Virus record (IMG/VR): IMGVR_UViG_3300044731_002337
Span: 1-64,000 of that record
Reading direction: 5' to 3' (one strand)
DNA length: 64,000 nt
The notes beneath the pieces were generated by a model, which worked only from the letters and a program-made list of their open reading frames with translations, ran no database searches and was not told where the DNA came from. The position numbers and the translations under genes were made by a program. Below are positions 13,001 through 64,000 of the stretch, piece by piece (the first letter of the stretch is position 1; every line of letters begins with the position of its first letter).

Positions 13001-16000
13001 AGCACAATTATGTTTGGTCCCAGCATGTCTCTGTAATGCTTGTAGTATCTCGGTTTGATCAGGTCTGGGTTTCAATAGGTATACACGTTCCCAAAATGTA
13101 CGAATGGATTCATGGGGCGAAAAACGTCTCACGTAATGCTGGTCCCAATATGCAATCCAATCATCATAAATTAGACGTTGATCTATTGTATCTTTATTGA
13201 GATAATCCAACATAAATGACCCACTATATAGTAAAGGATTGATAGCGCTTACAACTTCATATACAAAGGGGCTATTTTCATTGAGGTTCATGGATAGAAC
13301 GGTGTATAGGGCAATCATATCTGTGACTGATATATTGATAAACCAGGAAAAGTCTGGTAAAAATTCAAGAATTGCAAAATGAGGGTCAATCACGATCTTG
13401 TCTCGAAGTGATGGGTCATGATGGCGATACATATCAAAACGTTTATGATGAAATAATCTGACTAATAATGCTCTTCTGTTTGGATTATCAGTGTGGAACA
13501 TGAGGCATACACTTGCAGTAGAATCATGACATGACCAGTGAAGTAGAGGATCTTTAATAACTTGATCATAATTCGTGTACCAACCATCATTTGGATTGTT
13601 GAGATGCCATCGATTCTGTATGCGGTACCAGGTATGGGAAGGAAGTTTCTGTTGTACGGAAATAAAACGAGCGGTAACTTGAGGTTCATTCGAAGAGGTA
13701 ACCTGTTGAGTAGATGTATCTTTAGTTTGAATCGAGTATCCATGTTCTCGCCATTGTGATGAATGCAAATCGAAGAATGTAATGAATTCACATACTGGTA
13801 ATGTCTTTTGATACATCCAATGTGATGTTATAGGATCCAAGGTGAGTTCAGGGTTTTCCATTGTAGTGATGGTTTGACCTGATGCTTTTATATGTAAATA
13901 GCGAAAGTGGCTGCTAGCATTACAATAGTTAATCAGTGGTTGGAATAATGTGGCGTCTTGACCTTGTAATGCGTAAATATAATAAATGAAGAGTTCTTTG
14001 TGAAAGGTTGGCGAGGTATTGAGAAATTGTTGGATGATCCAAGGTTCTGGATATTGTGGGTCTCGACATAATAGGAGGGCCAAATAATAATAGGCGAGAT
14101 TATCTTGTATATCAGGTCGAAATACGTGTTGAAGTTGTAATGTGACGCGGTAAGCTACACAGATGCCTAAATACAAGTGTAGATGTTCTGTAGGGATGGT
14201 GTGGTACTGGAGATGCCAAAAATGGTTACGTACCGTTTGGGCGTATTCGTCACGCTGTTGTAGGTTAAGTGTGGTGCAAGGTGAATGACGAAATGAAGTG
14301 ACAATGTCTCGAAATTGAATAGAGGCAAAAGAAAGATTACAGTTTAGGTTACCTTGAACGGGGATCATGATGGGTGATGTGGTAATGGTTTGGGATGGTT
14401 CCAATACAATAAAGTGTTGTATAAATTTGTCGAGCTCCTTCTTGTTTGTGGTGATGGGTTTATGTTTATGATTAATTTGGTTACGTAATTTAAAAGTAAT
14501 GAGTAAAGCGGTGAATGCATCAAGTTCAGAATGGAGTTGTAGTTTATGTTTCACGCTGAGTAGATCAGAAACCTTGGTTCGACTTTGAAAGAGTAGTTTG
14601 AGATATTGGTCTAAGGAGGCGCGTGATACCTTGGACACTACATAATTATACCATAGGAAGCCAAATGTATAATTAATCATACCGAAAATGTCAGTATTAA
14701 GATCTGGCTCGACAATGATTCTTCCTGTCAGGTAATAGGTGAGAAAACTGAACACATATGGAAATTGTTGTGCAGAAATGGTCTCTTTGGTTTGCCAGTA
14801 TAGACATGCTTCTTTACAATATTTAGCATCGATAATAAGTTTGAGATGATTATTGTATTGGTATGGCATTCGAGCGTGATTTAGCCATGGAAAGGTTTCA
14901 AATTCTTGGTTTGGAATCCAGTGAGTGTTGGTTGGAACAGTAAAGTATTCATATGCGGGATAAGAAGTATCTTTGGAATTGATATCATAATAATCAATGT
15001 GGAATGTACGAATTAATTTTTGATAAGTGTTTCGGTCGCATATTGCACCTTCTTTGCAGACGACATGTTGTAGAGCATGACCCATAGATAAGGTTTCGTT
15101 GGAGTCGATTTTGGTTGGTGCTTCGACATGTTTTTTCATGTAATTAAAAAAATCGGTAAAGTAGTGACAAACTTCTTGGAGGTGTTTTTGGTGTTGGGTG
15201 ATGAGCTGGTAGACGACATACCACAAGGTGCAATAAAAAGCGCATGTTCCTCCTAATTGGGGAGAGGCGTAAAGTCGACCTTCATGCCAGGTACATGCCA
15301 TTCTACCCATAGCATAGATGGTATAACGAGTTGGATGTTGTGGGATTTCAGGTGGAACGGTATGAAACTGTTGATACATTTCATCGGTATCATGGAATCG
15401 AATGGACTTGTCACCAGAAATGAGGAATTGTTTTAATTGGTCTTGAGATGGTTTGATGGGTTGTACAACATTGTACATGCCTTCAAGTTCATTATGGAAT
15501 TGTAATCCATCACCACTATTACATACAAACACTTGTTCACCAGGCCGAGTAAAGAGTATTGTTGCATGTCCAATCGTATTAAAAAGACGAACTGATGTAT
15601 ATGTTTCGTCTAATATATGGCAATAACTCTCGATAATTAGTTTATACATGTGCGGATCAGTACGATTAGCTAAAAAATGATAAGTCATCGCTCTGAGAAG
15701 ATCTTTGGTCATGATCTTGGTTTCACTGCCGTTACCATTTACCAATAAGTCTTGTAATGCAACTACATTCGCTAATTCTGATTGATTTAACAATAGACGG
15801 AATCGATTTAATGAGTCATACATTTCTTCGAGTGAAAGCAGCCATGGGAAATGTTCGGTAGGATGTACTTGGTATGCCCAAATATGTACCCCTAATTTGT
15901 TTACCTTTTTCATACTATGAAATTCTTTTATATCGTCATGAAGAATCAAGTTGGCGTAAGTAGTATCTACCATAACATTTACAAAGAATGGATTTTTCCA

Positions 16001-16027
16001 AAAGGTAATGGGGATATTATTTATCAT
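10034..16027 (-). CDS. ~2000-aa DUF3638/DUF3645-like protein: putative N-terminal Cys-peptidase plus SF2-like P-loop NTPase (paralogue 1)
   Basis: QLLMGMGKSSIIMP Walker A, IIDEYD Walker B, EQEQEREIEVENEV; N-terminal GHA..CNSG..QLGGTC. Confidence 0.75.
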   Translation of the reverse strand: MINNIPITFWKNPFFVNVMVDTTYANLILHDDIKEFHSMKKVNKLGVHIWAYQVHPTEHFPWLLSLEEMYDSLNRFRLLLNQSELANVVALQDLLVNGNGSETKIMTKDLLRAMTYHFLANRTDPHMYKLIIESYCHILDETYTSVRLFNTIGHATILFTRPGEQVFVCNSGDGLQFHNELEGMYNVVQPIKPSQDQLKQFLISGDKSIRFHDTDEMYQQFHTVPPEIPQHPTRYTIYAMGRMACTWHEGRLYASPQLGGTCAFYCTLWYVVYQLITQHQKHLQEVCHYFTDFFNYMKKHVEAPTKIDSNETLSMGHALQHVVCKEGAICDRNTYQKLIRTFHIDYYDINSKDTSYPAYEYFTVPTNTHWIPNQEFETFPWLNHARMPYQYNNHLKLIIDAKYCKEACLYWQTKETISAQQFPYVFSFLTYYLTGRIIVEPDLNTDIFGMINYTFGFLWYNYVVSKVSRASLDQYLKLLFQSRTKVSDLLSVKHKLQLHSELDAFTALLITFKLRNQINHKHKPITTNKKELDKFIQHFIVLEPSQTITTSPIMIPVQGNLNCNLSFASIQFRDIVTSFRHSPCTTLNLQQRDEYAQTVRNHFWHLQYHTIPTEHLHLYLGICVAYRVTLQLQHVFRPDIQDNLAYYYLALLLCRDPQYPEPWIIQQFLNTSPTFHKELFIYYIYALQGQDATLFQPLINYCNASSHFRYLHIKASGQTITTMENPELTLDPITSHWMYQKTLPVCEFITFFDLHSSQWREHGYSIQTKDTSTQQVTSSNEPQVTARFISVQQKLPSHTWYRIQNRWHLNNPNDGWYTNYDQVIKDPLLHWSCHDSTASVCLMFHTDNPNRRALLVRLFHHKRFDMYRHHDPSLRDKIVIDPHFAILEFLPDFSWFINISVTDMIALYTVLSMNLNENSPFVYEVVSAINPLLYSGSFMLDYLNKDTIDQRLIYDDWIAYWDQHYVRRFSPHESIRTFWERVYLLKPRPDQTEILQALQRHAGTKHNCAIQLLMGMGKSSIIMPYLIVDYLESIRHSPQLTTHGIYILVIQPRHLVKDALQKVMALQLIPWVIIRTGFHPAKLSRRPGFSIIHVVSDADLKRLYLLYKPGAFTPDMMIIDEYDSVCMPCKSDYNQVVKERLGYGPFKLSEKMMHWFQHILPEIIICHENYPHWDKDQLQYCDQGYEYLFQHWRHCIHTIEHEWLYRVKYGFRDHSLFIVPYIAMDVPHDTSEFTSNDVKYIGTCIALRHAKTLTHDQRQLLTRTISRRRDLELVAPHKNLLCAYVSECLFPKLCYTDIVKTISMVDILKQKQCITYAFSGTIAIPSSDELNITCVTGDSSYRHVVKLLQDQAPHIKPIQHIWPSIHHYDVFIDACGYCKQYTPSQVLDLLHKHTKRPIVYVDAKHTTKVYPNQHLYSITNNSNSFNNEDHHYFYYFDNAHIVGTDIKHPHSLRVLLMAHESMREYQVVQAMYRIRGIHLPEHKHSLHIVYELSSTQPKSNNQLPDQWHKLQQQDMETNRKYLKTQLIRYATKLKQGSYRVSLAHSTILDQEQEQEREIEVENEVQVDILYNPDQFVDNNYPYTQINSHGIINEQTGIDTPLGPHVFVSNYCQQFIRYNPAKWFDMFLLTHPQKMIIIHYDELYSLWGKLHPTLHRVFHAEGHLLYPHPSATESNHLLPCMLNLEKVTKQDLQHVITLIDSPKHFCKMVNKWLDARPVHDTILFRFQRFHGNKLSYTTTDILTRHADEMASTPSPKFIPHEHFDDHFDDNLDNSDLKSDDIPSPPYQPSPSSPSKTSTETEVEQEMILKTKTKKKKKTITYHRKNGRVVVNAKLQKLICQYVMHSLPEETTHVLTTIIQRMIHDTLITKYNLEQTNVYDYIDEEELYHSRKRRKKVEKLLSKYTDQLITHHMIRTVEQMFSTHSTCTRLTTAMKLAAGLLDDSLQKISHLVSHHFPNVDENTRREMGHYIITHSKSQFKRLSSQMIQKLHTKFIIHAK
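13673..13703 (-). repeat. Single in-frame unit of core family 1 inside the 1997-aa CDS
   Basis: GGTAAC-TTGAGGTTCATTCGAAGA-GGTAAC encodes VTSSNEPQVT; not present in the paralogue. Confidence 0.8.
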
Positions 16028-16045: not shown

Positions 16046-19000
16046 TTACATAAGAAAACTTTTGATTAGTTTTTGTTTCATAGTAGAACTGAGTCGAGAA
16101 AATAGACAACCACTTTTAGCATGCGTAACTACAAATTTGGCCATATTACGTTTTATGTTATCCTCCACATTGGGGAAATGATGAGAGACTAAATAGAAAG
16201 ATTTTTGTAATGAATCGTCTAGTAGTCCAGCTGCAAGTTTCATGGTGGTTGTTAGACGAGTAAATGTAGAGTGAGAGGAGAACATGTGTTCAATGGTACG
16301 AATCATGTGATGGGTAATAGGTTGATCTGTATATTTCTCTACAAGTTTTTTAACCTTTCTTCTTCGTTTTCGACTTTGAACTAATTCTTCTTCGTCAATG
16401 TATCCATACACATTGGTTTGGTCAAGATTGTATTTGGTCAGTGTAAGATCATGACTCATGTTATGGATGAGTATAGTCGTGACTCGAATAGTTTCTTCAG
16501 GTAGACATTCCAAAACATATTTTCGGATACGTTTTTGCATGGATGGACTGACGACAAGTTGACCGTCAATGCGATGAACTTTGGGTATTCTGGATTTGGG
16601 AATAGTATAGTAATGAGTCAAGTCTGGTTCTGGTTCAGTTTTGGATGATGATGAGGAAGAATTTATAATGATTGGTGAGGCTTTACTTACAATGGGTGGT
16701 ATCATTGTCATGGCAACTTGCGGTAATGTAATTGGTGCTTCCGCTGGTGGTGGTGGTGGTGGTGAAGCAGGTTTGAGGATAGAGGATGATGGATAGATGT
16801 ATTTATGAGTATACTCTTTTGATGTTTGGGAAATGGTATAAAAAAGTCGTTTTCGATCGGCATTCGATGAAAAGAGTATGGTGTGGCTTAAAGGGCGAGA
16901 CATATGACATAGACTTTCCATGTTTTTGAATTCGGAAGGAACAGAAATTTGTTTGGCAATTTCAGTGAGGTGTGTAGAGGTTACACTGGATAAATAAAGC
17001 ATTGTGGCAATCATGGGGTGAAAGGCTTTAGTTGACGCGGTTGGATAGATAAGATGACCTGTAGCATGAAATACCTTGTGTTTGTTAGGTAATAGTTTGC
17101 CCCATAATGTATATAATTCATCATAATGGATAATAATTGATTTAGGATAATGCTCAAGGATAAATAGATCATACCATGTTATATAATTTTCACGAACAAA
17201 TTCTTTACAATATTTGGAAAGAAAAGTATGGGGACCAAATGAAATTTCGTTGGATGAAGCATTGTAGTTGATACGCCCTTGATTATCAATATGGGTATGA
17301 TTTTGGCGAATAACACGTTTGATAGTTAGTTTTACATGATAGGTATCTATTTCTACTTCATTTTCAACTTCTTTTTCATTTTCCTTTTCCTGTTCCAATT
17401 CAAGCATAGATGCTGGTTGATCATTACAATCCTCATGCATTATTTGATAAGACTTTTTAGCAATTTTCTTGTCATTCCTTAGTAGTAATATGTCTAAATA
17501 TTTGGCGTTAGTTTGTATATCTCTGTGTTGAGCATCTCTCCAAATGGTGACTAATGAGTTGTTGGGGGTTAACGATTCGTAAGCGAAAGTAATATCATGT
17601 TCGTTAGTGGGTACATCAATACCTCGAATGCGATACATGGCTTGTACGACTTGATATTCTCGTAATGATTCATGTGTCATGAGTAGAATGCGTAGTTTTC
17701 GAGGATGTTTTATGTCTGTACCTACAATGTGGGTATGATCAAAGAAGTAAAAATATGATTTGGACATATCAAACGTATTCGAGGTTCTGGTTTCAGAATA
17801 CACATGATTTTCTGGGTACACCATAGTAATGTGTTGTGAATTAACATAGACGATAGAGCATTTCACGTGTTCATGAAGCAATTCAATGATTTCCTGTTGT
17901 GAGTGATCTTTGCAATAGCCGCACGCATCAATAAAGACGTTGTAATGTTTGAGGTCAGCCCATAGATTCGTCTTGGGTGAAATGCATCTCATCTTGTGTC
18001 GGTTAGATTCGAGAATGTGTATTACTTTGGAGTAGGATTGATCCTTGGTGACGCAGGTGACATTTAATTGAGGGCTGGAAGGGATGGCTACAGTACCGGA
18101 GAAAGCATAGACGATACCGTGTTTTTGTCGTAATATATCTACCATGGTAATATTATTGACAATGGTACTGTAATGGAGTTGTGGGAATAAACATTCGGAT
18201 GCGTAGGTGCATAAGGGATTATTCTTGTCATCACTAGGTTGAATAATGCGTAATTTGAGGCGTCGATGAGTGGTTGCTTTGAGTAGTCGTTGTTGTTCTC
18301 GAGTGAGGTGACCTTCATGTCGTAGAGCCATACAGGTAGCAATGAAATTGACATCATTGGACGAAAATTCAGAGGATTCATGTGGTATGTCCATGGCAAT
18401 ATAAGGGACAACAAATAAGGAAGCTTTAGGTCCCGTATGTCGAAATCCATACTTGACTCGATAAATCCATTGATGATGAATCGTATGTACACATGTTTTC
18501 CAATGGGTAAATAATCGTTCTTGACCTGGATCACAATATTCGGATTGTTCTGTATCCAGTAAATCATATCGTTGGGTCATGATGATTTGGGGTAATCGAT
18601 GTTGAAACCAATGTAACATTTTGGGGGAAAGTGATGTATTACAACTATAGCCTCTTTGTTCTGCTACCACTTCATTATAGTCTGATTTACAAGGCATACA
18701 GATGCTATCATATTCATCGATGATCATCATATCAGGAATGAATTCATTGGGTTTTAATTTGAGATAGAGTCTCTTGAGATCGGTATCGCTTACTACGTGT
18801 ATGACAACATGGGATTTACGTCGAGTTAAGAGTTGGTCGGTGATGCCATAACGAACAATGACCCAAGGAATAAAGTTGAATGTAATAATTTTCTGTAGGG
18901 CGTCTTTGGTTAGGTGGCGAGGTTGAACGACTACAATGTATAGGCCTTGTTGATGCAGTTGTGGTAATGTGGTGGCATTTTGTAAATAGTTGACGAGTAG

Positions 19001-22000
19001 ATAGGGCATGATGATGGATGATTTTCCCATGCCCATGAGGAGTTGAATTACGCAATTGGGTCCTTTGGCTGCACCTTTCTCTAGTGCTTCTATTACATCC
19101 TTTTGGGCTGGTGTTGGAGTGAGGGGATATATACGCCCCCAAAAAGAGGAAACTGTATCTCGGGGTGTAAAAAGGCGTATATAATGTGTATCCCAATAGG
19201 TAATCCAGTCTTGTGGTAATATTCTCTTTGGGGAGTCCTTATTCAAGTAGTCGATCATGTAGGAGCCGCCATACATAAGTGGATCATAAGCAGAGGCAAC
19301 TTCATAAACTCGATTAGCATTAATGTTATGGTTTTCGGCGAGAATACGGTAAAGAACAACTATGTCCGTGATGGATAAGTCCTTAAACCATGTGTAATCT
19401 GAAGTAAATTCAATGATACCAAAATAAGGGTCAGTATGGATTTGGGATCGATAGGTTTCGTTTTGGTGTATATAGGAATCGTGACAATAGGAGTTGGTAT
19501 AATAGAGTAACAAGCCTCTTCTGGAAGGGTGGCTGGTATGATACATGAGACATATGGATGCGGCTTCAGCGTGACATGACCAGTGTAGTAAAGGATCAGA
19601 AATGACTTGAGAATAGTTGGTGAACCATCCTTCAGTGGGGTGATGTAAATGCCATTGTTGAGGTGTCACACTATACCAATTATGAGAAGGAATGCTTGGA
19701 GTAGTGGATCTATATCTCACAATACTGACATTATTTTTTTGGGTTCTTATCATGTATCCATACTTACAAAAGGGATCTTCTGGGAAACGAAAGAAGCTAT
19801 TTAATGGTTCGACTTTATCCCCATCATAGAACCATGTTCGAGTATTTTTGACTAATTGGAGAAGTGGTTCCTCAACCGTCGAGGTAGCGTCAGACGTCAT
19901 ATGTAGTTTTCGAAAAGCTGAGCTACATGAACACTGTTGCCATAATAATGTGATGGAGGATGATTTGCGAGTAGCATACAAATAGTATAAATAAATCTCT
20001 TGGGACTTGTTACGTGGGAGTGTTAAACGAATAAACTGGTCCATTATCCATTCTTCTGTATATTGTTTATCATCTCGACATAAAAGTAATGCTAGATAAT
20101 AATAGGGCAATGTAGAAAGAGGCAATTGCTTGTGTAGATTAGGGATGAGTACGTTGGATAATTGTAGTGTGACATTATAGGCTATACAGATACCCATATA
20201 AAGGTGGAGGTTGGATTCAGGGATATCATGAAATTTTAGATATTCAAAATGGTGACGAACACAGGACATTTCGATATCTTGTTGTTCTTTGGGTAGTAAC
20301 ACAACTTGACCGAATTCTATGCTTACCATTTTGGTGTTAAACTTCATGTCACCATATACGGGTATCAGTAAAGGAGAGAATTCAGTAACTTGTGTCGTCG
20401 GTGAAGCTTTATATTGGGACAGTAGTTTGCCAATGTCTTCATTTTTCACTAGAGGAGGAATAAACATATTGTTATAGCCTAATTGTTGATGTAACTTGCC
20501 AGCAATAACGAATGTGGCAAAAGTATCATGGTACAATTTTAGTTGTAACTTAACTGATGCATCGATAATATCTTCTTTGTTGACATCATTCCTCAAAATA
20601 TCACTTATGATATTGGTAACGAGAACAGTCCCCACTTTTGAGGTAATGTAATTATGCCACAGGCTACCGAAAGTGAGGTGTAACATTCTGAATAAGTCCG
20701 CCTGATGTGAACTAAGGGCCATAGCCATACTCGTGCAAAAATAACGTAAAAAACGCAACACTAAAGGAAATTGGGTGTCTGTAATCATCGATTTAGATTG
20801 CCAATGATGACATGCTTGTTTCACATATAATCCATTCATCAGTAATCGTAAGTCAGCTCCCATTCGTAATCTGGAATCTTCATGGTGAAACAGCCATGCA
20901 AATGTTTCGAATTCATTTGTTTGATCCCAGATTTGATCAAGACCTAACTTGGGATCTTCCCTAATTAAGTAATCTGTCTTGGTCAAGTTATGTCCATATA
21001 TCCTTCTATGATAATCGAGAACTAGCTTGTCATAGGTTTTATCACATTGTCGATTCTCTTTGCATAGTACATGTTGTAATGTGTACCCTTTGGAAGCAAT
21101 TGGGGTAGAAACAACTTGAATGGGTGATGCAACATGTTGTCTCATGTATTTTAAAAATTCCTCTATATACAACCCAATTTTTACTGCGCCGTGTTGACTG
21201 GTAGTAAGTAAACGGTATACGAGCAACCACACATTACAATAAAACGTACATGTGCCACCCAACTGTGGACTAGCATAAAGACATTGAGCGTCTTGATGAT
21301 AAGAGAAAATCATACGCGACATGCTGTACACGGTATATTTCTTAGTGGTAGCTGGTGGTGGTGGGGATACTAAATTAAGTTGTTCATAAATATCATCTAC
21401 TCTAGAAAAACTTATGGTTTTGGTGTTTTTACGTACAAGTGACATGAATTCATGATCTGGAATAATTTCTTGAATGACATTGTACATAGACTCGAAAGTA
21501 GCATGATTTTGTAGTCCACTTCCACTATTACTAATAAACCATTTCCTATTTTTCTCATCATGGAATAACAGCATAGCATGACCAGATGAATTCAATTCTC
21601 GTACTTTCATTTCATTAGGGTCCAATACTTCCAATAAGAATAACATAATATGAAAATACATTTGATGATCTGTATCTGCTTCATTTCCTCCCATCATCCC
21701 AAAGTCATGTAAATGGCGCATTGTCATGGCGTGAATCAATTCTTTGGCCATGCGTGCAGTTGTACTTCCGACATTAGGTTTGATTAATTCCTCCATAGCA
21801 ACAATATGGGCTAATTCGGAATCATTAAGTCGCAATTTATAGTTATCAATTCTTTTGATAATCTCTTTTTCAGAAATTTGCCAGGGAAGTCGTTTCTTAG
21901 GGTAATGTAGATGAGCCCATACAAATAATAGTAATGGAGTTTGTTCATTTGTTTTATAAACTTCTAGACTTGAAAGATCATGGCGTAATACATTCATTGC

Positions 22001-22060
22001 TATAGTTTCCATGAATATTTCCAAAAACTGTAAATTTCTCCATAATGCTTTTGGGATCAT
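16046..22060 (-). CDS. ~2000-aa DUF3638/DUF3645-like protein (tandem paralogue 2)
   Basis: Colinear with 10034..16027 along its whole length: GHA..SNSG..QLGGTC, QLLMGMGKSSIIMP, IIDEYD, shared C-terminal domain. Confidence 0.75.
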   Translation of the reverse strand: MIPKALWRNLQFLEIFMETIAMNVLRHDLSSLEVYKTNEQTPLLLFVWAHLHYPKKRLPWQISEKEIIKRIDNYKLRLNDSELAHIVAMEELIKPNVGSTTARMAKELIHAMTMRHLHDFGMMGGNEADTDHQMYFHIMLFLLEVLDPNEMKVRELNSSGHAMLLFHDEKNRKWFISNSGSGLQNHATFESMYNVIQEIIPDHEFMSLVRKNTKTISFSRVDDIYEQLNLVSPPPPATTKKYTVYSMSRMIFSYHQDAQCLYASPQLGGTCTFYCNVWLLVYRLLTTSQHGAVKIGLYIEEFLKYMRQHVASPIQVVSTPIASKGYTLQHVLCKENRQCDKTYDKLVLDYHRRIYGHNLTKTDYLIREDPKLGLDQIWDQTNEFETFAWLFHHEDSRLRMGADLRLLMNGLYVKQACHHWQSKSMITDTQFPLVLRFLRYFCTSMAMALSSHQADLFRMLHLTFGSLWHNYITSKVGTVLVTNIISDILRNDVNKEDIIDASVKLQLKLYHDTFATFVIAGKLHQQLGYNNMFIPPLVKNEDIGKLLSQYKASPTTQVTEFSPLLIPVYGDMKFNTKMVSIEFGQVVLLPKEQQDIEMSCVRHHFEYLKFHDIPESNLHLYMGICIAYNVTLQLSNVLIPNLHKQLPLSTLPYYYLALLLCRDDKQYTEEWIMDQFIRLTLPRNKSQEIYLYYLYATRKSSSITLLWQQCSCSSAFRKLHMTSDATSTVEEPLLQLVKNTRTWFYDGDKVEPLNSFFRFPEDPFCKYGYMIRTQKNNVSIVRYRSTTPSIPSHNWYSVTPQQWHLHHPTEGWFTNYSQVISDPLLHWSCHAEAASICLMYHTSHPSRRGLLLYYTNSYCHDSYIHQNETYRSQIHTDPYFGIIEFTSDYTWFKDLSITDIVVLYRILAENHNINANRVYEVASAYDPLMYGGSYMIDYLNKDSPKRILPQDWITYWDTHYIRLFTPRDTVSSFWGRIYPLTPTPAQKDVIEALEKGAAKGPNCVIQLLMGMGKSSIIMPYLLVNYLQNATTLPQLHQQGLYIVVVQPRHLTKDALQKIITFNFIPWVIVRYGITDQLLTRRKSHVVIHVVSDTDLKRLYLKLKPNEFIPDMMIIDEYDSICMPCKSDYNEVVAEQRGYSCNTSLSPKMLHWFQHRLPQIIMTQRYDLLDTEQSEYCDPGQERLFTHWKTCVHTIHHQWIYRVKYGFRHTGPKASLFVVPYIAMDIPHESSEFSSNDVNFIATCMALRHEGHLTREQQRLLKATTHRRLKLRIIQPSDDKNNPLCTYASECLFPQLHYSTIVNNITMVDILRQKHGIVYAFSGTVAIPSSPQLNVTCVTKDQSYSKVIHILESNRHKMRCISPKTNLWADLKHYNVFIDACGYCKDHSQQEIIELLHEHVKCSIVYVNSQHITMVYPENHVYSETRTSNTFDMSKSYFYFFDHTHIVGTDIKHPRKLRILLMTHESLREYQVVQAMYRIRGIDVPTNEHDITFAYESLTPNNSLVTIWRDAQHRDIQTNAKYLDILLLRNDKKIAKKSYQIMHEDCNDQPASMLELEQEKENEKEVENEVEIDTYHVKLTIKRVIRQNHTHIDNQGRINYNASSNEISFGPHTFLSKYCKEFVRENYITWYDLFILEHYPKSIIIHYDELYTLWGKLLPNKHKVFHATGHLIYPTASTKAFHPMIATMLYLSSVTSTHLTEIAKQISVPSEFKNMESLCHMSRPLSHTILFSSNADRKRLFYTISQTSKEYTHKYIYPSSSILKPASPPPPPPAEAPITLPQVAMTMIPPIVSKASPIIINSSSSSSKTEPEPDLTHYYTIPKSRIPKVHRIDGQLVVSPSMQKRIRKYVLECLPEETIRVTTILIHNMSHDLTLTKYNLDQTNVYGYIDEEELVQSRKRRRKVKKLVEKYTDQPITHHMIRTIEHMFSSHSTFTRLTTTMKLAAGLLDDSLQKSFYLVSHHFPNVEDNIKRNMAKFVVTHAKSGCLFSRLSSTMKQKLIKSFLM

Positions 22061-57599: not shown

Positions 57600-60500
57600 T
57601 TATGTAATATTATGTCGAGTTAGCTTTTCTTCTGCGATGGCGAGCCGTGATTGTACAGCGGATAGAGTAGTAGATAGTTCTTGTATGGCTTTGATCATGG
57701 GGGAGATAAATTCGGTGTAGGAGAGACTATAGGAATCTTTTTCAGGGTCGTATGAAATTCCAGCAAAGTCATTCAAAGACAATCCACTATTAGTAACGGT
57801 GGATTGGACTTGTTGGGCTAGTAAACCATAGTTGGTCTTGGTATAAGTGTGATGTATAGTCTCTGTGTTGTTGTTAGCATCTGGTGGTCCCTCGACATTA
57901 TAATCTTTGAATTTATAGCTTACAGGTCGTAGTGCATTGATAAAACTTAGCCCAAGTGGTGAATCAGTAATATTCTCTTTTAACCTTTCATCAGAGCTTT
58001 GGTATACTGTTTCACAATAAATTTGTTTGAATTGAAGTCCTGATAATCCAATGTTAGACGTATTATTGGACAAGGGGAGAATGTTAACACCTACATACAT
58101 ATATCCTATATAAGAATCCAAGTATCTATTGGAGGGAGCACCTAAACGATAGGTATTTGTCGCTAGTGGATATAAGCTACGAGTATTCATATCCCCAGTA
58201 CTAGTGGTAGTAAATACAAAACCAGCAAAACTGCCACCATTTCTTCCGCCAGTAGAGTTATCACAATAAAGATAAGGTGTATATTGACCGCCACCATTAT
58301 CAAGCCCAAATTCCATAAAACTTTTACCACTGGTATGAATAACTACATTGGTTTTCACATTCGGGTCTGTTCCCGGAGAATATACATTGAGAGAACCTTG
58401 GCCACCAGTAACGGATAACGAGCCTGTTACACTTGTACTACCCGAATTCGTGACAGAAAATCTTTCCACGGCAGACGAATCTTGCACCGCCATCTTACCA
58501 TTAGTACCCAATACAGAGATATCATTCATGGGTGTAATTGGACCACCATTTGATTTGGATAGACGTATATTCCTTATATCATGAGTGGTACTAGCCCCAC
58601 CAGTGAATGACCCAAACCCATAATAATCATTAGCTTGTGATAATGTTCGACGAGTATCAGTAAAAGGGTAGAATCCTGGAACCGCCCATTCATTGATGGT
58701 GATCCAAAACTGATTGATACAGAATACTATTTTAATTCGCATCCATGAATTACTAGATAGTCCAGCATTAGAACTACTAGTGGATAAATTGGTTGTCGCT
58801 AATAAAAGACTGGGGCTACCACCATTCCAATATAGATTTAATTCATCGTCTTGATATTCATCAATTACTACAGAGTAACCGCCACAGTTTGCTGTATTAG
58901 CAGTGAGGTTAGTAGGTACGCTGCTATTGTTAAAAAAGAACCAAGTAGCATCAGCTCCAGCAATATTACCAATCATTAACTCAAATTCCATCGTAAATGA
59001 ATTTCCTGGATGCCCTCTATACACCAATTGACCTTGTTGGTTCTGCAAGTTAGGGGTTAATTGCACGTAACCAGATTGTTTAGAAGCTGATCCTTGTACA
59101 TATCCTCCTCTTAAGGTTGATCCGGCACCTAAACCGTCTTCCATTTGAATAACACTATTGTACGCACTAGGGTTCAAAATCGTTCCCATGGCCGAATTAT
59201 CAGAGGGAGTAATATTCAAGGAACCGGTAGACAAGGTAATGTATCCATTGGAATTGTTATGGTACTGTAACATTTCATTTGATGTACCATATGAACACCT
59301 ATTTCCCAACATGGATAAATATCGATTTGTACCATCCAAGCGAAATACGGTAGTGATGACAGAGGAAGCCCCTTCTGATTGGAAATCAATATTTCGCCCT
59401 AACCCTGATACCATACAATTGGTAGTTGAACCATCATGAAACATCCACAAATCACTACTATCACCTAAACTTAATCTCACATTATCAAAACACTTGACTC
59501 CATTCTGGGTTAATGAACATCTTGTAATTGTGGAATCAGTCAACAATAAGCTATTGGATCCCAACACAAACCTCATATCACATGAATTCAAAGTTACGGT
59601 AGTCAAACCAGATCCAGCTGAAATACTCGATCTGGTGTTAGAACTTTCTTTAAAGGTAATACCAGACACACTACATGCTCCATTACTATCTCTGGTTATA
59701 ATAGTAGATACCGTATTATCAGAAGAGACAGCAGCCAATTTTGCAGTAGTTATCGTACCATCCGTAATGTCTGCATTCACAATCAACGATGTACTACATT
59801 CACCTGATCCATTCGAAGCGGTATGCACTACCCCAGCAGAGCTAAGACTTGAAACGGTCAATGCATTTGTTATTAAAGTACCCGAAATGGTATCCCCAGT
59901 TTTCAATACATTTAACGAAGCCGCTCCTGTCAGACTGGCGGTAATCGTTCCAGCAGAGAAATTACCAGAAGAGTCTCGAACAACGAGGTGACTGGCGGTA
60001 TTACTGGAGGATACAGCAGCTAGTTTTGCATTGGTAATCGTAGCATCAGTAATGTCAACGTTATCAATGAGGGAGGAGGAAAAAACACCAGATGTGAGGT
60101 GAGCAATGCCTGTACTAGATGAGCCGGATAGTGTTAGACCAGTAAATGTTGGCGAATCAGTTTCAGCAAGATCTTGGGGAAGACCACCTGCAGGACCTGA
60201 AGTGATCACACCATTACTTGCAATTGATAATGAACCACTTGAAAGTCCAGTGAGAGTTAATCCTGCAAATGTAGGTGAAGCTCCAGTATGAATGTTTTGA
60301 GGTAATGATAAGGTAATGTGTCCTGTAGTAGCAGATACTAGCACTTGATTACTAGTTTGAGTGAGAGATAAGACGCCATCATTGGTAATCGCATCAGAGG
60401 TGAGACTTATACCCGTACCCACATTTAGTTTAGCAGTTAAGGTAGCTTGGGTTGTCGCGTTAGAGAGATAGGATAATGCACTTGTGACATCTGTAGCACC

Positions 60501-60902
60501 AATATAGAGATTATTCGTATATGTAGTATTGAATCGTTTGGTAAGTGACCCTATATTAATGGTATTGGTAGTGGAAGGTACAAGGGTTGCAGTATCTTCT
60601 AGTGTGATGGTACCACTTGCATTTATAGCTGTAGTGTGAAAAGTTGTCCATCGATGGGTTGAATCGCCAAGAGCAACAGACGAATTAGGTAGGAGACCAT
60701 CAGATTGAATTCCTAGATTCCAAATTCGTAGTTCACCAGCACTATCGCGTAGAGTTCCAGAGCAATTGGTAAAGGATAAAGTACCATCAACCTCTGTGTT
60801 GTTTCTAATCTGAATGATAGAACCTGTAGACGAAAGACTTGGAGTAAAGATGCCATCAGATCCTACTCTGACTTCGGTTTGTGACATGCGAGAATTAGAC
60901 AT
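57600..60902 (-). CDS. Tail-fibre-like protein with lectin-like (ConA-type) insert and C-terminal peptidase S74 chaperone
   Basis: DITDATITNAKLA and ASLNVLKTGDTISG shaft motifs; VQLTPNLQNQQGQL..GADATWFF lectin-like segment; SSDERLKENI..LRPVSYKF..GLLAQQV..SYTEFISPMIKAIQEL. Confidence 0.85.
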   Translation of the reverse strand: MSNSRMSQTEVRVGSDGIFTPSLSSTGSIIQIRNNTEVDGTLSFTNCSGTLRDSAGELRIWNLGIQSDGLLPNSSVALGDSTHRWTTFHTTAINASGTITLEDTATLVPSTTNTINIGSLTKRFNTTYTNNLYIGATDVTSALSYLSNATTQATLTAKLNVGTGISLTSDAITNDGVLSLTQTSNQVLVSATTGHITLSLPQNIHTGASPTFAGLTLTGLSSGSLSIASNGVITSGPAGGLPQDLAETDSPTFTGLTLSGSSSTGIAHLTSGVFSSSLIDNVDITDATITNAKLAAVSSSNTASHLVVRDSSGNFSAGTITASLTGAASLNVLKTGDTISGTLITNALTVSSLSSAGVVHTASNGSGECSTSLIVNADITDGTITTAKLAAVSSDNTVSTIITRDSNGACSVSGITFKESSNTRSSISAGSGLTTVTLNSCDMRFVLGSNSLLLTDSTITRCSLTQNGVKCFDNVRLSLGDSSDLWMFHDGSTTNCMVSGLGRNIDFQSEGASSVITTVFRLDGTNRYLSMLGNRCSYGTSNEMLQYHNNSNGYITLSTGSLNITPSDNSAMGTILNPSAYNSVIQMEDGLGAGSTLRGGYVQGSASKQSGYVQLTPNLQNQQGQLVYRGHPGNSFTMEFELMIGNIAGADATWFFFNNSSVPTNLTANTANCGGYSVVIDEYQDDELNLYWNGGSPSLLLATTNLSTSSSNAGLSSNSWMRIKIVFCINQFWITINEWAVPGFYPFTDTRRTLSQANDYYGFGSFTGGASTTHDIRNIRLSKSNGGPITPMNDISVLGTNGKMAVQDSSAVERFSVTNSGSTSVTGSLSVTGGQGSLNVYSPGTDPNVKTNVVIHTSGKSFMEFGLDNGGGQYTPYLYCDNSTGGRNGGSFAGFVFTTTSTGDMNTRSLYPLATNTYRLGAPSNRYLDSYIGYMYVGVNILPLSNNTSNIGLSGLQFKQIYCETVYQSSDERLKENITDSPLGLSFINALRPVSYKFKDYNVEGPPDANNNTETIHHTYTKTNYGLLAQQVQSTVTNSGLSLNDFAGISYDPEKDSYSLSYTEFISPMIKAIQELSTTLSAVQSRLAIAEEKLTRHNIT

Positions 60903-60937: not shown

Positions 60938-61862
60938 TTATTCTTGGTTTGGAAACGAGGAAGAATGGAGTTTACGAAAAGTCTCCTTGTATTTAGGTAA
61001 CCCACCATTTGCTTCAGTATATTCAAACAAGGCCTCAGCTTCGATATCTGAACTGGGAAGATCAATTTCCATAGGATCCATCCATTCTTTAAATTGCATA
61101 TTGATAATGCATTGCCTCATGTCCCCATTAGTTTGGGCGATTAGGTGATCAAGGTCCAAGTCCACCTTTTCTTGTAGGGCAATGAATTGAAGCCGTTGCT
61201 TAATGTGATCATGTCGTAATGGTGCAAATCGAAAGGCCAAACATCTGGATTTGATGGGGTCAATGATCTTGTGTAGATAATTCACGATGAAAATAAAACG
61301 ACAATTCTTCACGTAGGTTTCCATAACTCGTCGTAACAAGAGTTGAGCATCTGATGACAATCCATCCGCTTCATCAAGTATCACTAGTTTAAGACCTTGG
61401 CTACAAATAAAAATAAAACCAAAGTATTAAACATAAATAATCACCCATCAAAGTGGGGTCTTGAAGAAGCAAAAGGTACAACCCTTTGACGCATAATATC
61501 AATTCCATTTTCATCTGAAGCATTAATCTATTGCCAGGTAAGTGTTGATAGCAAAAGAAGAAAAAAAAATACCTCTAGTGTTTCGACAAAATGTTTGGAA
61601 ATAATGTGGGCTGCTGAGGTTTTTCCTATTCCATTCGAGGTGAATAGGGGCGATTACGAATATGGAGAACAACCTGTGCCTGGAGGACCATGGAGGAGCA
61701 TGTGTGGAATATTACCTTTTTCAATCATGCGAGTAACTAGATATAGGTGTATAAAAAAAAACATATGAACATGAATTTACTTGCATGTATGATATCATCT
61801 TGTGAGACCATATCTGAAAAAGTCTTGGGTCGATAAACTTCGGTCCAAAGTCGACAATCCAT
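60938..61862 (-). CDS. RFC: Replication factor C small subunit, complement(join(60938..61400,61445..61527,61573..61625,61674..61736,61781..61862)), 247 aa
   Basis: Four introns (44, 48, 45, 44 nt) restore LWTEVYRPKTF, HMLLHGPPGTGKTS, LEINASDENGID, KLVILDEAD, SRC. Confidence 0.93.
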
Positions 61863-62040: not shown

Positions 62041-62791
62041 TCACAAGAAGTCATCAAGCGCGTGTAAAAGCCGATAATCGCATAAAGGTGATTGTCTCAA
62101 TGTGATGATGGCTTTAAGACGATGGGCTGATTTGAAGGCCGCCTACAATAACTTAATACCGTAAAAAAAATGAAAAAGAAAAAGTAGTACATGATCATAT
62201 TGAAGGGAAGTTTGATGAAGAAAATTGGTCGCTGAGGGTAAAATCCATGCCATGTGTAATAAATCAAGGCGTGTAAGAAGATGATGTAAGAGTAATGAAA
62301 AATCTTCCGGATAATATGTATCAGTATGATTGACTACAATTCCATATCGTCCACCTAAGAAACTATGAATAACGAAAAAAGGACAAGGTTCATTAAGAAA
62401 AAATACCTTGAAGAAGATCACCAGAATGAAGAGTGATGTGTGATGTGCGACGAAATGTTAATAGAGGATAGACAAGAAGTTGGTGTAGTTTCAAGTCGCG
62501 CAGATAAATGTGTTGAAGAGATTCTTTAGAGTGAGTGGCAACGTAATTGTAAAGGGCGTTAGTAAGGTCTTGACTATGTTGTGTAGCATAGTCTGGTAAA
62601 GGTTCAGGTTGACAACATTTCAAATAAATGGCGGTAACAAATTCTTGAATGCTATACTTGGTAAGTAGTTCATTATTCCCAAAATGGATGAATTGGAATT
62701 CACGATAAACATGAATGTCTAGCTTCACCATAAACTTCTCATGTTCTACTGCGAAAAAAAGTTCCGAACACACATCAAAGAAGTGAAACAT
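62041..62791 (-). CDS. Spliced hypothetical protein, complement(join(62041..62142,62191..62354,62407..62791)), 216 aa
   Basis: 52-nt (GTATTT..TTAG) and 48-nt (GTACTA..GTAG) T-rich introns give one continuous frame; no homology support. Confidence 0.6.
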
Positions 62792-62860
62792 GGTTTTTGA
62801 AACATAAACCCAAAAAAAAAGTAAGTTGAGACATCGGAAAGAAAAAAAAAGGAGAAGAAG

Positions 62861-63097
62861 ATGTCGGGAATGCAAATTTTTGTCAAGACGTTAACTGGGA
62901 AAACCATTACATTGGATGTGGATTCAGCGGATACTGTTGCATCGATAAAGCAAAAAATTCAAGATAAGGAAGGGATTCCACCTGACCAACAGAGATTGAT
63001 ATTTGCAGGGAAACAATTGGAAGATGAACGTACTCTTGCCGATTACAATATTCAGAAGGAGTCGACTCTCCATCTAGTATTACGTTTACGAGGCTAA
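62861..63097 (+). CDS. Ubiquitin ending at Gly75 (LRLRG*), with a short MSG leader
   Basis: Near-canonical ubiquitin sequence; codons CGT TTA CGA GGC TAA. Confidence 0.95.
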
Positions 63098-64000
63098 TTT
63101 GCCTACAAGACTTGAAATAAAAAGTAATCCATAAATTGGTAAAATGGTCCATAAATAACTATTGTCCGTGTGGATTGGCTTTGCACCTTGTTCATTCGTA
63201 GAGGTATTATAATCATTCGTAGAGGTATCTTGTAGTTTCTTACGACGACGAGGTAGTGGGTTTTGATTATTCGTAGAGGTATCTTGTGGTCTTTGAACAG
63301 AATTTGGTCTTGTTTGTGGTCTGTTGTTGTCGTCAAGCCTTGTTTGTGGTGCATGAGAATCACGTTCAATCACCTTCATATCCTTTTCTGCAATTCTCTG
63401 TTCTATGGCGAAGATTTTGGTAAATTCTTCGAAAAAAATGGTATAATTAGAACTTTTTTTGTTCAAATCTGAGTAGATAATGGTGTCAAAGTAGTTGGAA
63501 TACTGTTCAAGCATTTCCCTAATGATTCTCGCCATGAGTGCGCGGTATCTATCTTGTCGTTCTATTTTGCCATCAAACCAAGCAAATGCGCCACATCCAA
63601 TAGGACCAATAAAAAAATGTTTTGTACGTCGTGCTATAGCGGTGAGAAATATGGTAGTCCACATATCGACAATAGCCCATCTCGTTTCCTGTGTAACACA
63701 GCCTTTTTGGCGTTCGTCAAATTGACCCATTTTCACAACATAATCGATATAAGGTTTTTTATCATGAGCGAAGCATGGTGCAGCTGCAGCAATCATGGGT
63801 AGTTTCATAATAGGGTTTTCCGGATCTAAATGAAGGTGAGTCTTGTTTTTACCTTGGTATTCATACTTTCCATATACAGTCACATTAGGACTTACAATAC
63901 ATCTTTTAAAAGGAATAAACTTACGACTATTTGCATACACTGCCTTTTCAAAGTCTTGTTCATGATACAGTCCTTCACGCTGAATAAACTCTTTAGCGTT
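63086..64000 (-). CDS. Bacterial-type PARG/macrodomain-like (TIGR02452/DUF2263-like) protein, 5' partial, C-terminal membrane anchor
   Basis: [22 protein letters not shown]; frame open to the window end; hydrophobic C-terminus. Confidence 0.6.
63191..63281 (-). repeat. Three degenerate core-family-1 units (TACCTCTACGAATRA), in frame (TSTN[E/D/N])
   Basis: + strand ATTCGTAGAGGTA occurs three times; first spacing 21 nt. Confidence 0.7.

What the first reader, a model, noticed from the sequence alone, without database searches (positions are those of the whole stretch)
62861..63097. Ubiquitin lacking Gly76: a non-conjugatable decoy or chain cap?
The ORF ends CGT TTA CGA GGC TAA = LRLRG*. E1 activation needs the C-terminal Gly-Gly, so Ub(1-75) should not be conjugated. 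All seven lysines and the L8/I44/V70 patch are intact; G53 is E, and there is an MSG leader. It could act as a free acceptor or a competitor of ubiquitin-binding domains and DUBs. The 3' end overlaps a convergent gene by 12 bp, which may constrain or explain the truncation.
Basis: partly seen in the sequence, partly recalled or inferred. Interest (0 to 1): 0.78.

Follow-up and report, generated by a model that had tools for sequence, protein, structure and literature searches.

The report
Giant-virus ubiquitin missing its last glycine
A lake-water giant virus encodes an otherwise near-perfect ubiquitin that stops one glycine short, so it cannot be attached to other proteins in the normal way. 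The same kind of truncation is common, and kept by selection, in many giant viruses, including cultured ones.

Summary
Window 62861-63097 (+) encodes a 78-residue ubiquitin with an MSG leader and residues 1-75, ending CGA GGC TAA. It is 64/75 identical to human ubiquitin, with all seven lysines, L8/I44/V70 and G53E. The same DNA is 100% identical in four other assemblies, and no splice restores Gly-Gly.

It is not a one-off. Fifty-three IMG/VR giant-virus contigs carry ubiquitin ending LRLRG-stop, including the CroV and Orpheovirus genes. At least 119 end LRLR-stop, including Megavirus and Marseilleviridae. In a tail-agnostic sample of 80 contigs, 13 lacked Gly-Gly.

The truncated genes are as conserved as complete ones. 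Close pairs show up to 12 synonymous and no non-synonymous differences.

Laboratory UbΔG76 cannot be charged by E1 and serves only as an acceptor. UbΔGG in yeast seeds Ubp14-resistant free chains that slow the proteasome. The best reading is therefore a selected, non-conjugatable, acceptor-only or decoy ubiquitin.

The 12-bp overlap with the convergent PARG-like gene does not explain the truncation. This virus has no close relative in the data, so selection after its own truncation is untested. Its function is inferred.

The parts
62861..63097 (+). Ubiquitin ORF: 78 codons plus TAA, made of an MSG leader and ubiquitin residues 1-75
   Evidence: identical in L001-L003 and L007
62861..62869 (+). 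ATG TCG GGA, the three-residue MSG leader ahead of canonical Met1. Which ATG is used is untested.
   Evidence: P0005 has the same leader. Short M/MS/MSS/MG leaders are rare in other viral ubiquitins.
62870..62872 (+). Second in-frame ATG, the canonical ubiquitin Met1 and a possible alternative start
   Evidence: read directly
63092..63097 (+). GGC TAA: the Gly75 codon followed directly by the stop. There is no Gly76 codon.
   Evidence: No GT/GC-AG splice starting inside the ORF yields an RGG end.
63086..64000 (-). 3' part of the convergent gene for a 449-aa microbial-type PARG-like protein. It runs off the window. Its stop and last three codons overlap the ubiquitin ORF by 12 bp.
   Evidence: the GGG...QEE motif aligns to solved bacterial PARGs
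62792..62860 (.). 69-nt A-rich spacer between the ubiquitin gene and the divergent upstream ORF. Presumed promoter region (inferred only).
   Evidence: gene calls
62393..62791 (-). Divergent upstream ORF (132 aa as called) with no family match

Best explanation
This is an intact giant-virus (Nucleocytoviricota-like) ubiquitin gene whose product ends at Gly75. It belongs to a widespread, selectively maintained class of giant-virus ubiquitins that lack Gly76 or both terminal glycines.

Because the C-terminal tail is one residue short, the canonical E1 cannot adenylate it, so it cannot act as a donor. All lysines and the I44 patch are intact, so it can still be bound by ubiquitin receptors, E1, E2/E3 enzymes and DUBs, and it can still be ubiquitinated as an acceptor.

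The most likely mode of action is that of a free, acceptor-only ubiquitin. It would seed unanchored chains whose proximal end lacks the free Gly-Gly that USP5/Ubp14-type enzymes recognise, and/or compete for ubiquitin-binding sites. Either effect would perturb host ubiquitin-proteasome signalling during infection.

Shown here: the gene, the truncation, its reproducibility, its recurrence, and purifying selection on the class. Taken from the literature: the behaviour of UbΔG76 and UbΔGG. Inferred: that this viral protein acts this way in its unknown host.
For: - The gene and its stop are real and reproducible.
- No splice restores GG. Beyond the TAA the frame reads FAYKT-stop and the other two frames encode no Gly-Gly.
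- Recurrence of the Gly75 end: 48+5 IMG/VR contigs end LRLRG-stop, about 45 of them as full ORFs. They include 'ubiquitin [Cafeteria roenbergensis virus BV-PW1]' and 'Ubiquitin [Orpheovirus IHUMI-LCC2]'.
- Recurrence of the Arg74 end: at least 119 contigs end LRLR-stop. They include the Megavirus, Marseillevirus, Cannes 8 and Tunisvirus/Insectomime genes.
- Prevalence: 13 of 80 contigs in a tail-agnostic sample lacked Gly-Gly.
- Selection within the Gly75 class: clade L087/L102/L107/L114/L118/L128 shows up to 11 synonymous and 0 non-synonymous differences; L095-L098 shows 12/0; L126-L133 shows 4/0.
- Selection across classes: median dN/dS is about 0 for G75 pairs, 0.083 for R74 pairs and 0.035 for GG pairs.
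- Conservation: identity to human ubiquitin and retention of the lysines, I44 and R42 are the same in truncated and Gly-Gly classes. This window's substitutions are all ordinary for viral ubiquitins.
- Biochemistry: UbΔG76 is not activated by E1 and is used as an acceptor only (PMC3814767). UbΔGG expressed in yeast is ubiquitinated, forms Ubp14-resistant free chains and impairs proteasomal degradation. USP5 recognises the free C-terminal Gly-Gly (PMC7659471).
Against: - There is no expression data. No RNA run holds the gene.
- This virus has no close relative in the data. Synonymous sites are saturated against every other gene, and all assemblies are identical. Selection after the truncation in this particular lineage is therefore untested.
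- The most similar protein found, P0005, ends RGGH, so the loss may be recent here.
- CroV, whose only ubiquitin also ends at Gly75, encodes its own E1 and six E2s (PMC10583209). That fits a conjugating role at least as well.
- The host and its DUB repertoire are unknown.
- The cap/decoy activity has never been tested with any viral truncated ubiquitin that I could find.
Confidence: 0.5

Rival explanations
1. The protein is still a conjugated modifier. A virus-encoded E1-like enzyme adapted to a 75-residue tail would activate the terminal Gly75. Alternatively, a route that does not use the C-terminus would attach it to targets, for example Arg42 phosphoribosyl-linked or transglutaminase-type ligation as in Legionella effectors. 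This would give an orthogonal viral ubiquitin system.
For: The Gly75 forms keep a terminal glycine, which other modifier/E1 pairs such as Atg8, Atg12 and UFM1 use (general knowledge). CroV's single ubiquitin ends at Gly75, and CroV encodes an E1 and six E2s (PMC10583209). R42 and Q40 are invariant. The adjacent gene is an ADP-ribose-hydrolase-type enzyme with an intact GGG...QEE motif.
Against: No E1, E2 or DUB family was found among the window's ORFs of 120 aa or more; there is only one RING protein. The commoner Arg74-ending forms have no terminal glycine at all yet are equally conserved, which argues that conjugation through the C-terminus is not what is being selected. R42 and Q40 are invariant in all ubiquitins, so they do not discriminate. 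No gene neighbour is specifically linked to truncated ubiquitins. The ubiquitin-PARG adjacency was seen only in this virus.
Confidence: 0.15
2. The protein has a non-covalent or structural role unrelated to chain biology. Examples are a virion component, a binding partner of a viral protein in the manner of the non-conjugated Hub1/UBL5, or a competitive dead-end ligand of host E1.
For: The ubiquitin surface is strongly conserved without a conjugatable tail. Truncation points vary (L73, R74, G75, LRLF), which suggests the tail is dispensable while the globular body is what matters.
Against: All seven lysines are retained at about 100% in the truncated classes. That is expected if acceptor function matters, though it is also simply how ubiquitin is constrained by its many binders. 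There is no direct data either way.
Confidence: 0.18
3. In this particular virus the gene was recently disabled by loss of the Gly76 codon and is drifting towards loss. Its conservation would simply reflect too little time having passed.
For: The most similar protein, P0005, shares the MSG leader but ends RGGH. All five assemblies are identical, so there is no within-lineage signal.
Against: The same and shorter truncations persist under strong purifying selection in many other lineages and across whole families such as the Marseilleviridae. No unusual substitution has accumulated. The frame, the start and the upstream spacer are intact.
Confidence: 0.12
4. The apparent truncation is an artefact: an assembly error, an unrecognised intron, read-through or a frameshift. 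The real product would end Gly-Gly.
For: The genome does use short spliceosomal-type introns. The RFC gene 1 kb away has four of them, 44-48 nt long.
Against: The sequence is identical in independent assemblies. No GT/GC-AG intron of 31-400 nt starting inside the ORF yields RGG. The codons up to Gly75 are canonical ubiquitin, so they are exon. Beyond the TAA the frame reads FAYKT-stop, and the other frames encode no Gly-Gly. More than 150 other viral genes show the same phenomenon.
Confidence: 0.02

Closest known systems
Ubiquitin of Cafeteria roenbergensis virus BV-PW1 (YP_003969983.1) and of Orpheovirus IHUMI-LCC2 (YP_009448267.1)
   Same: Both are monomeric giant-virus ubiquitin genes whose ORF stops directly after Gly75 (LRLRG-stop). 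All lysines and the I44 patch are kept.
   Different: They are 61/73 and 54/73 identical to the window protein over residues 1-73. Neither has the MSG leader. CroV is reported to encode its own E1 and E2s, and none was found in this window. I found no paper that comments on their missing glycine.
Ubiquitins of Megavirus (chiliensis, courdo11, vitis) and Marseilleviridae (Marseillevirus, Cannes 8, cajuinensis, Tunisvirus/Insectomime)
   Same: These are highly conserved giant-virus ubiquitins without a Gly-Gly end. The state is shared across a whole virus family.
   Different: They end at Arg74 (LRLR-stop), so they lack even the single terminal glycine kept here.
Laboratory reagents UbΔG76 (Ub1-75) and UbΔGG (Ub1-74)
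   Same: They have the same C-terminal truncation. UbΔG76 is not activated by E1 and is used as an acceptor-only ubiquitin (PMC3814767). UbΔGG in yeast is ubiquitinated, forms Ubp14-resistant unanchored chains and impairs proteasomal degradation (PMC7659471).
   Different: They are engineered from cellular ubiquitin. The window protein is natural, has 11 substitutions and a possible N-terminal extension, and has not been assayed.
Baculovirus viral ubiquitin (v-Ubi, AcMNPV)
   Same: It is a virus-encoded ubiquitin variant thought to alter chain biology (bioRxiv 10.1101/756791, seen).
   Different: By my own knowledge, not tested here, v-Ubi keeps Gly-Gly and is conjugated. Its peculiarity lies in linkage and DUB resistance, not in a missing C-terminus.
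Hub1/UBL5-type non-conjugated ubiquitin-like proteins
   Same: These are ubiquitin-fold proteins that act without a Gly-Gly end, by non-covalent binding (general knowledge).
   Different: They are distant in sequence from ubiquitin. The window protein is 85% identical to ubiquitin itself.

Membership tests
Ubiquitin proper (PF00240, not merely ubiquitin-like) | Full-length match to the ubiquitin profile and very high identity to canonical ubiquitin | tested here: met
   PF00240 at E=1.7e-33 over profile positions 1-72. 64/75 identical to human ubiquitin.
Ubiquitin proper (PF00240, not merely ubiquitin-like) | Seven acceptor lysines, the L8/I44/V70 patch, and R42 and R72 | tested here: met
   Read directly from the translation. 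The same is true across the truncated classes.
Ubiquitin proper (PF00240, not merely ubiquitin-like) | C-terminus LRLRGG, either free or exposed by removal of an extension or fusion partner | tested here: not met
   The ORF ends LRLRG-TAA. No splice, read-through or frameshift gives GG.
Conjugatable (type I) ubiquitin-like modifiers | C-terminal glycine that a cognate E1 adenylates, with thioester transfer to an E2 | not testable with these tools
   A terminal Gly is present, but the tail is one residue short for Uba1. The literature says UbΔG76 is not activated by E1. No E1 or E2 was found in the window. The rest of the roughly 299-kb genome was not readable.
Giant-virus ubiquitins lacking the diglycine (CroV/Orpheovirus type, Gly75 end) | Monomeric ubiquitin ORF on a giant-virus contig with a stop codon directly after Gly75 | tested here: met
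   Same architecture as 53 IMG/VR contigs and the CroV and Orpheovirus genes. The window's gene content is Nucleocytoviricota-like.
Giant-virus ubiquitins lacking the diglycine (CroV/Orpheovirus type, Gly75 end) | Truncated state maintained under purifying selection | tested here: inconclusive
   Met for other lineages. For this virus there is no relative close enough: dS is saturated and all assemblies are identical.
Pseudogene | Frame disruption, loss of start, or accumulation of substitutions at constrained positions | tested here: not met
   The ORF is intact with a start codon and an upstream spacer. Every substitution is at a position variable in other viral ubiquitins, with a residue seen in at least 6% of them.

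The most novel reading that the evidence does not exclude
Ubiquitin truncated at its C-terminus (ending at Gly75 or Arg74) is a widespread, positively maintained giant-virus effector. As a natural UbΔG76/UbΔGG it caps the proximal end of unanchored chains, making them resistant to USP5/Ubp14-type disassembly, or otherwise jams host ubiquitin readers. In the Gly75 forms it might instead serve an orthogonal virus-encoded E1/E2 cascade. Either way it would be a previously unremarked host-manipulation strategy shared by the Marseilleviridae, Megavirus, CroV, Orpheovirus and many uncultured lineages.
Probability: 0.4. Interest if true: 0.8.

Novelty: new variant of a known kind. Interest (0 to 1): 0.6.

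Why it matters
Virus-encoded ubiquitin is known and common; about 35% of giant-virus MAGs carry one (PMC11499249). It is usually assumed to feed the conjugation machinery.

Here, roughly one in six giant-virus ubiquitin genes in an unbiased sample cannot be a donor. These genes are as tightly conserved as the complete ones. The state is fixed in cultured model viruses: Marseilleviridae, Megavirus, CroV and Orpheovirus. This points to a selected function for free or acceptor-only ubiquitin, the natural counterpart of a standard laboratory reagent. It can be tested directly in existing amoeba and flagellate virus systems.

I found no paper in the searchable library that mentions this. The library is incomplete, so it may have been noted elsewhere. 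The window's own gene adds only one more member with a Gly75 end and an unusual MSG leader.

Tried and rejected
- A protein search of the 5.8-billion-sequence set with the ubiquitin itself was swamped by di-ubiquitin fragments and gave nothing useful.
- The RNA-run search found only two soil metatranscriptomes holding 6% of the words, so there is no expression evidence.
- Read laying worked on assembler contigs only. One run spans the stop with no differences; the other three either leave it uncovered or match only in short diverged pieces.
- Synteny: no flanking gene of this virus has a homolog near the ubiquitin genes of the other loci. Clustering of neighbours found no gene specifically linked to truncated ubiquitins.
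- Hidden intron: rejected, even though the genome has real 44-48-nt introns.
- Read-through or frameshift: rejected, because no downstream frame encodes Gly-Gly.
- Overlap with the convergent gene as the cause: rejected, because there is no enrichment.
- 'Register-shifted polyubiquitin unit' (the G before Met1 being the missing Gly76): rejected, because P0005 has the same MSG leader together with an intact GG, and most Gly75 genes have no leader.
- G53E as part of the phenotype: rejected, because Glu, Asp and Asn at position 53 occur in all classes.
- Placing the virus: the RNA ligase has only four distant unnamed relatives at 31-37% identity. The Atlas places an EEP-family protein among Nucleocytoviricota clusters. 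No finer placement was obtained.
- I could not read the remaining ~235 kb of the parent contig, so the presence of E1, E2, DUB genes or a second ubiquitin gene in this genome is unknown.

Full report
**1. The observation**

Window 62861-63097 (+) is an ORF of 78 codons plus TAA. It reads MSG followed by ubiquitin residues 1-75 and ends CGT TTA CGA GGC TAA, that is LRLRG-stop. It matches Pfam ubiquitin at E=1.7e-33 over the whole profile. It aligns without gaps to solved ubiquitin structures and is 64/75 identical to human ubiquitin.

A convergent ORF ends at 63086, giving a 12-bp overlap. In a longer copy of the locus that gene encodes a 449-aa protein with a microbial-type PARG catalytic domain. 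It keeps the GGG...QEE signature when aligned to solved bacterial PARGs.

**2. The truncation is real**

The exact protein is encoded on a 299,086-bp JGI/NCBI contig and in three other assemblies. Over 601 nt those three are 100% identical to the window. A 294,773-bp IMG/VR contig carries the same gene at the same coordinate. Eleven lake or freshwater metagenome runs from several studies (2020-2024) hold at least part of the stretch. Contigs laid from four of them show no variant, though only one spans the stop.

The genome does splice. The RFC small-subunit gene 1 kb upstream is interrupted by four GT...TAG introns of 44-48 nt. Once joined, it gives a 247-aa ORF with the GPPGTGKT, DEAD and SRC motifs. 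I therefore tested every GT/GC-AG intron of 31-400 nt starting inside the ubiquitin ORF. None yields an RGG end. Beyond the TAA the frame reads FAYKT-stop, and the other frames encode no Gly-Gly.

**3. Context**

The window has the gene content of a giant virus. It holds many ankyrin-repeat proteins, several protein kinases, an RNA ligase, UDG, a GNAT acetyltransferase, an EEP-family hydrolase, a RING protein, RFC and two fibre-like proteins with the S74 chaperone domain. An Atlas search places the EEP protein among Nucleocytoviricota clusters.

The virus has no close relative in the data. Its RNA ligase finds only four proteins at 31-37% identity. No flanking gene matches the other ubiquitin loci. 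No E1, E2 or DUB family was found among the window's ORFs of 120 aa or more. The other ~235 kb of the genome could not be read.

**4. The truncation is recurrent**

Among the 80 IMG/VR loci most similar to the query, seven ubiquitin genes lack Gly-Gly. I then ran three DNA pattern scans:
- The pattern ...T-x-H-L-V-L-R-L-R-G followed by a stop found 48 (TAA/TAG) plus 5 (TGA) viral contigs. About 45 are complete ORFs, with GC content 0.20-0.51 and 54-74 of 75 residues identical to human ubiquitin.
These gave 112 full-length genes and 85 distinct proteins.
- A scan blind to the tail gave, for the 80 contigs listed, 67 Gly-Gly, 9 Arg74-stop and 4 Gly75-stop. That is about 16% without the diglycine.

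Exact look-ups name cultured viruses:
- CroV and Orpheovirus ubiquitins end LRLRG.
- Megavirus chiliensis/courdo11/vitis, Marseillevirus, Cannes 8 virus, Marseillevirus cajuinensis and Tunisvirus/Insectomime ubiquitins end LRLR.

Two viral polyubiquitin genes have normal internal repeats and a truncated last repeat (L257, L312).

**5. The truncated genes are under selection**

Median identity to human ubiquitin over residues 1-73 is 67 for Gly-Gly genes, 67 for Gly75-stop genes and 69 for Arg74-stop genes. The lysines, I44 and R42 are retained at about 100% in all three.

Among Gly75-stop genes, one clade found in six contigs shows up to 11 synonymous and no non-synonymous differences (dS up to 0.28). 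Two other pairs show 12/0 and 4/0, and deeper pairs have dN/dS around 0.1. For pairs with dS below 1, median dN/dS is about 0 (G75-G75), 0.083 (R74-R74) and 0.035 (GG-GG). At dS below 0.5 there are 35 separate clusters containing only Gly75-stop genes and 85 containing only Arg74-stop genes. The state is therefore either very old or arose many times.

For the window's own gene the test cannot be made. Synonymous sites are saturated against every other sequence, with dN of 0.08-0.10. What can be said is that all 11 differences from human ubiquitin fall at positions variable in other viral ubiquitins, with residues seen in at least 6% of them.

**6. What the truncation does not depend on**

Overlap with a convergent ORF occurs in 3/41 Gly75-stop, 8/98 Arg74-stop and 13/122 Gly-Gly genes. 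The overlap therefore does not explain the truncation. Glu, Asp and Asn at position 53 occur in all classes. Short N-terminal leaders are rare and occur in all classes. No neighbouring gene family is specific to truncated ubiquitins.

**7. Mechanism**

[quoted passage not shown] That form is routinely used as an acceptor (PMC3814767) and as an 'unconjugatable' probe in cells (PMC9401080).

A review summarises Amerik et al. 1997. UbΔGG expressed in yeast is itself ubiquitinated and forms unanchored chains with the mutant at the proximal end. Those chains resist Ubp14, and the cells show impaired proteasomal degradation and growth defects. USP5 recognises the free C-terminal Gly-Gly through its ZnF-UBP domain (PMC7659471).

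The best-supported reading is therefore that this viral protein is a natural acceptor-only ubiquitin. It could seed long-lived free chains and/or occupy ubiquitin-binding sites, including the E1 adenylation site, in the infected cell. This step is inference, and I give it about 0.5.

**8. Rivals**

- An orthogonal conjugation route, 0.15. CroV has its own E1 and six E2s (PMC10583209), and the Gly75 forms keep a terminal glycine. Against this, the commoner Arg74 forms have none and are equally conserved.
- A purely non-covalent or structural role, 0.18.
- A recent neutral loss in this lineage, 0.12.
- An artefact, 0.02.

**9. Comparison and novelty**

The closest known things are the annotated CroV and Orpheovirus ubiquitins (same end), the Megavirus and Marseilleviridae ubiquitins (one residue shorter), and the engineered UbΔG76/UbΔGG. 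The window protein meets every defining feature of ubiquitin except the Gly-Gly end, so I file it as a ubiquitin variant rather than a conjugatable ubiquitin.

Reviews and surveys of giant-virus ubiquitin genes that I could read do not mention the missing glycines. Text searches for the idea returned nothing relevant. The library is incomplete, and the CroV genome paper was not held.

**10. Verdict**

The gene itself is one more member of an existing but apparently unremarked class. The class is interesting and can be tested directly in cultured giant viruses. I score interest at 0.6.

Noticed in passing
window 60938-61862 (-): The replication factor C small-subunit gene is split by four GT...TAG introns of 44, 48, 45 and 44 nt. 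Joined, it gives a 247-aa ORF with the GPPGTGKT, DEAD and SRC motifs. Spliceosomal-type introns suggest this giant virus depends on the host nucleus.
   Followed up: yes
window 1-64000: GC skew is positive in 29 of 32 two-kb bins (up to +0.35, about +0.17 on average) whatever the coding strand, at what appears to be the left end of the parent contig. This is an unusually one-sided strand composition.
   Followed up: no
window 63086-64000 (-), full gene in L001 6226-7575 (-): The convergent neighbour is a 449-aa microbial-type PARG-like protein. It has an intact GGG...QEE motif and a hydrophobic C-terminal stretch that looks like a tail anchor. Its adjacency to ubiquitin was seen only in this virus.
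   Followed up: partly
window 10034-16027 and 16046-22060 (-): Two tandem paralogous ORFs of 1997 and 2004 aa have only weak, sub-threshold matches to DUF3638/DUF3645.
   Followed up: no
window 1352-4123 (+) and 57600-60902 (-): Two large Ser/Thr/Gly-rich fibre-like proteins carry the Peptidase_S74 intramolecular chaperone domain. The second also has a weak legume-lectin-like match.
   Followed up: no
L257 and L312 (IMG/VR contigs): These are viral polyubiquitin genes whose internal repeats end RGG but whose last repeat stops at Gly75 (L257) or Arg74 (L312). Processing would release normal ubiquitin plus one non-conjugatable unit.
   Followed up: partly
L260-L379 (IMG/VR contigs); proteins P0154, P0156, P0159, P0170, P0171: Ubiquitin ending LRLR-stop (a natural UbΔGG) is about twice as common in giant-virus contigs as the Gly75 form. 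It is the state in Megavirus and across the Marseilleviridae.
   Followed up: yes
P0005 (2,047-nt contig of metagenome 3300059473): This is the closest protein relative. It has the same MSG leader, ends RGGH and lies next to a GIY-YIG nuclease gene in the same sample as the window's virus. Whether it belongs to a sister virus or is a second copy in the same genome could not be decided, because no DNA was served.
   Followed up: partly
L040, L042, L045, L047 and others; L010, L038, L048, L059: Many giant-virus ubiquitins are N-terminal fusions: to a short basic domain that looks like an HMG box by eye (not tested against a profile), or to very large fibre-like proteins. Of 197 viral Gly-Gly ubiquitin units examined in the first 259 loci, only 12 end exactly at Gly76 and 73 carry one extra residue.
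   Followed up: no
L004-L006 (ENA GROS21 metagenomes): Another AT-rich contig family carries a 75-aa ubiquitin ending LRLRG-TAA. It was found through the same 90% cluster as the window protein.
   Followed up: partly
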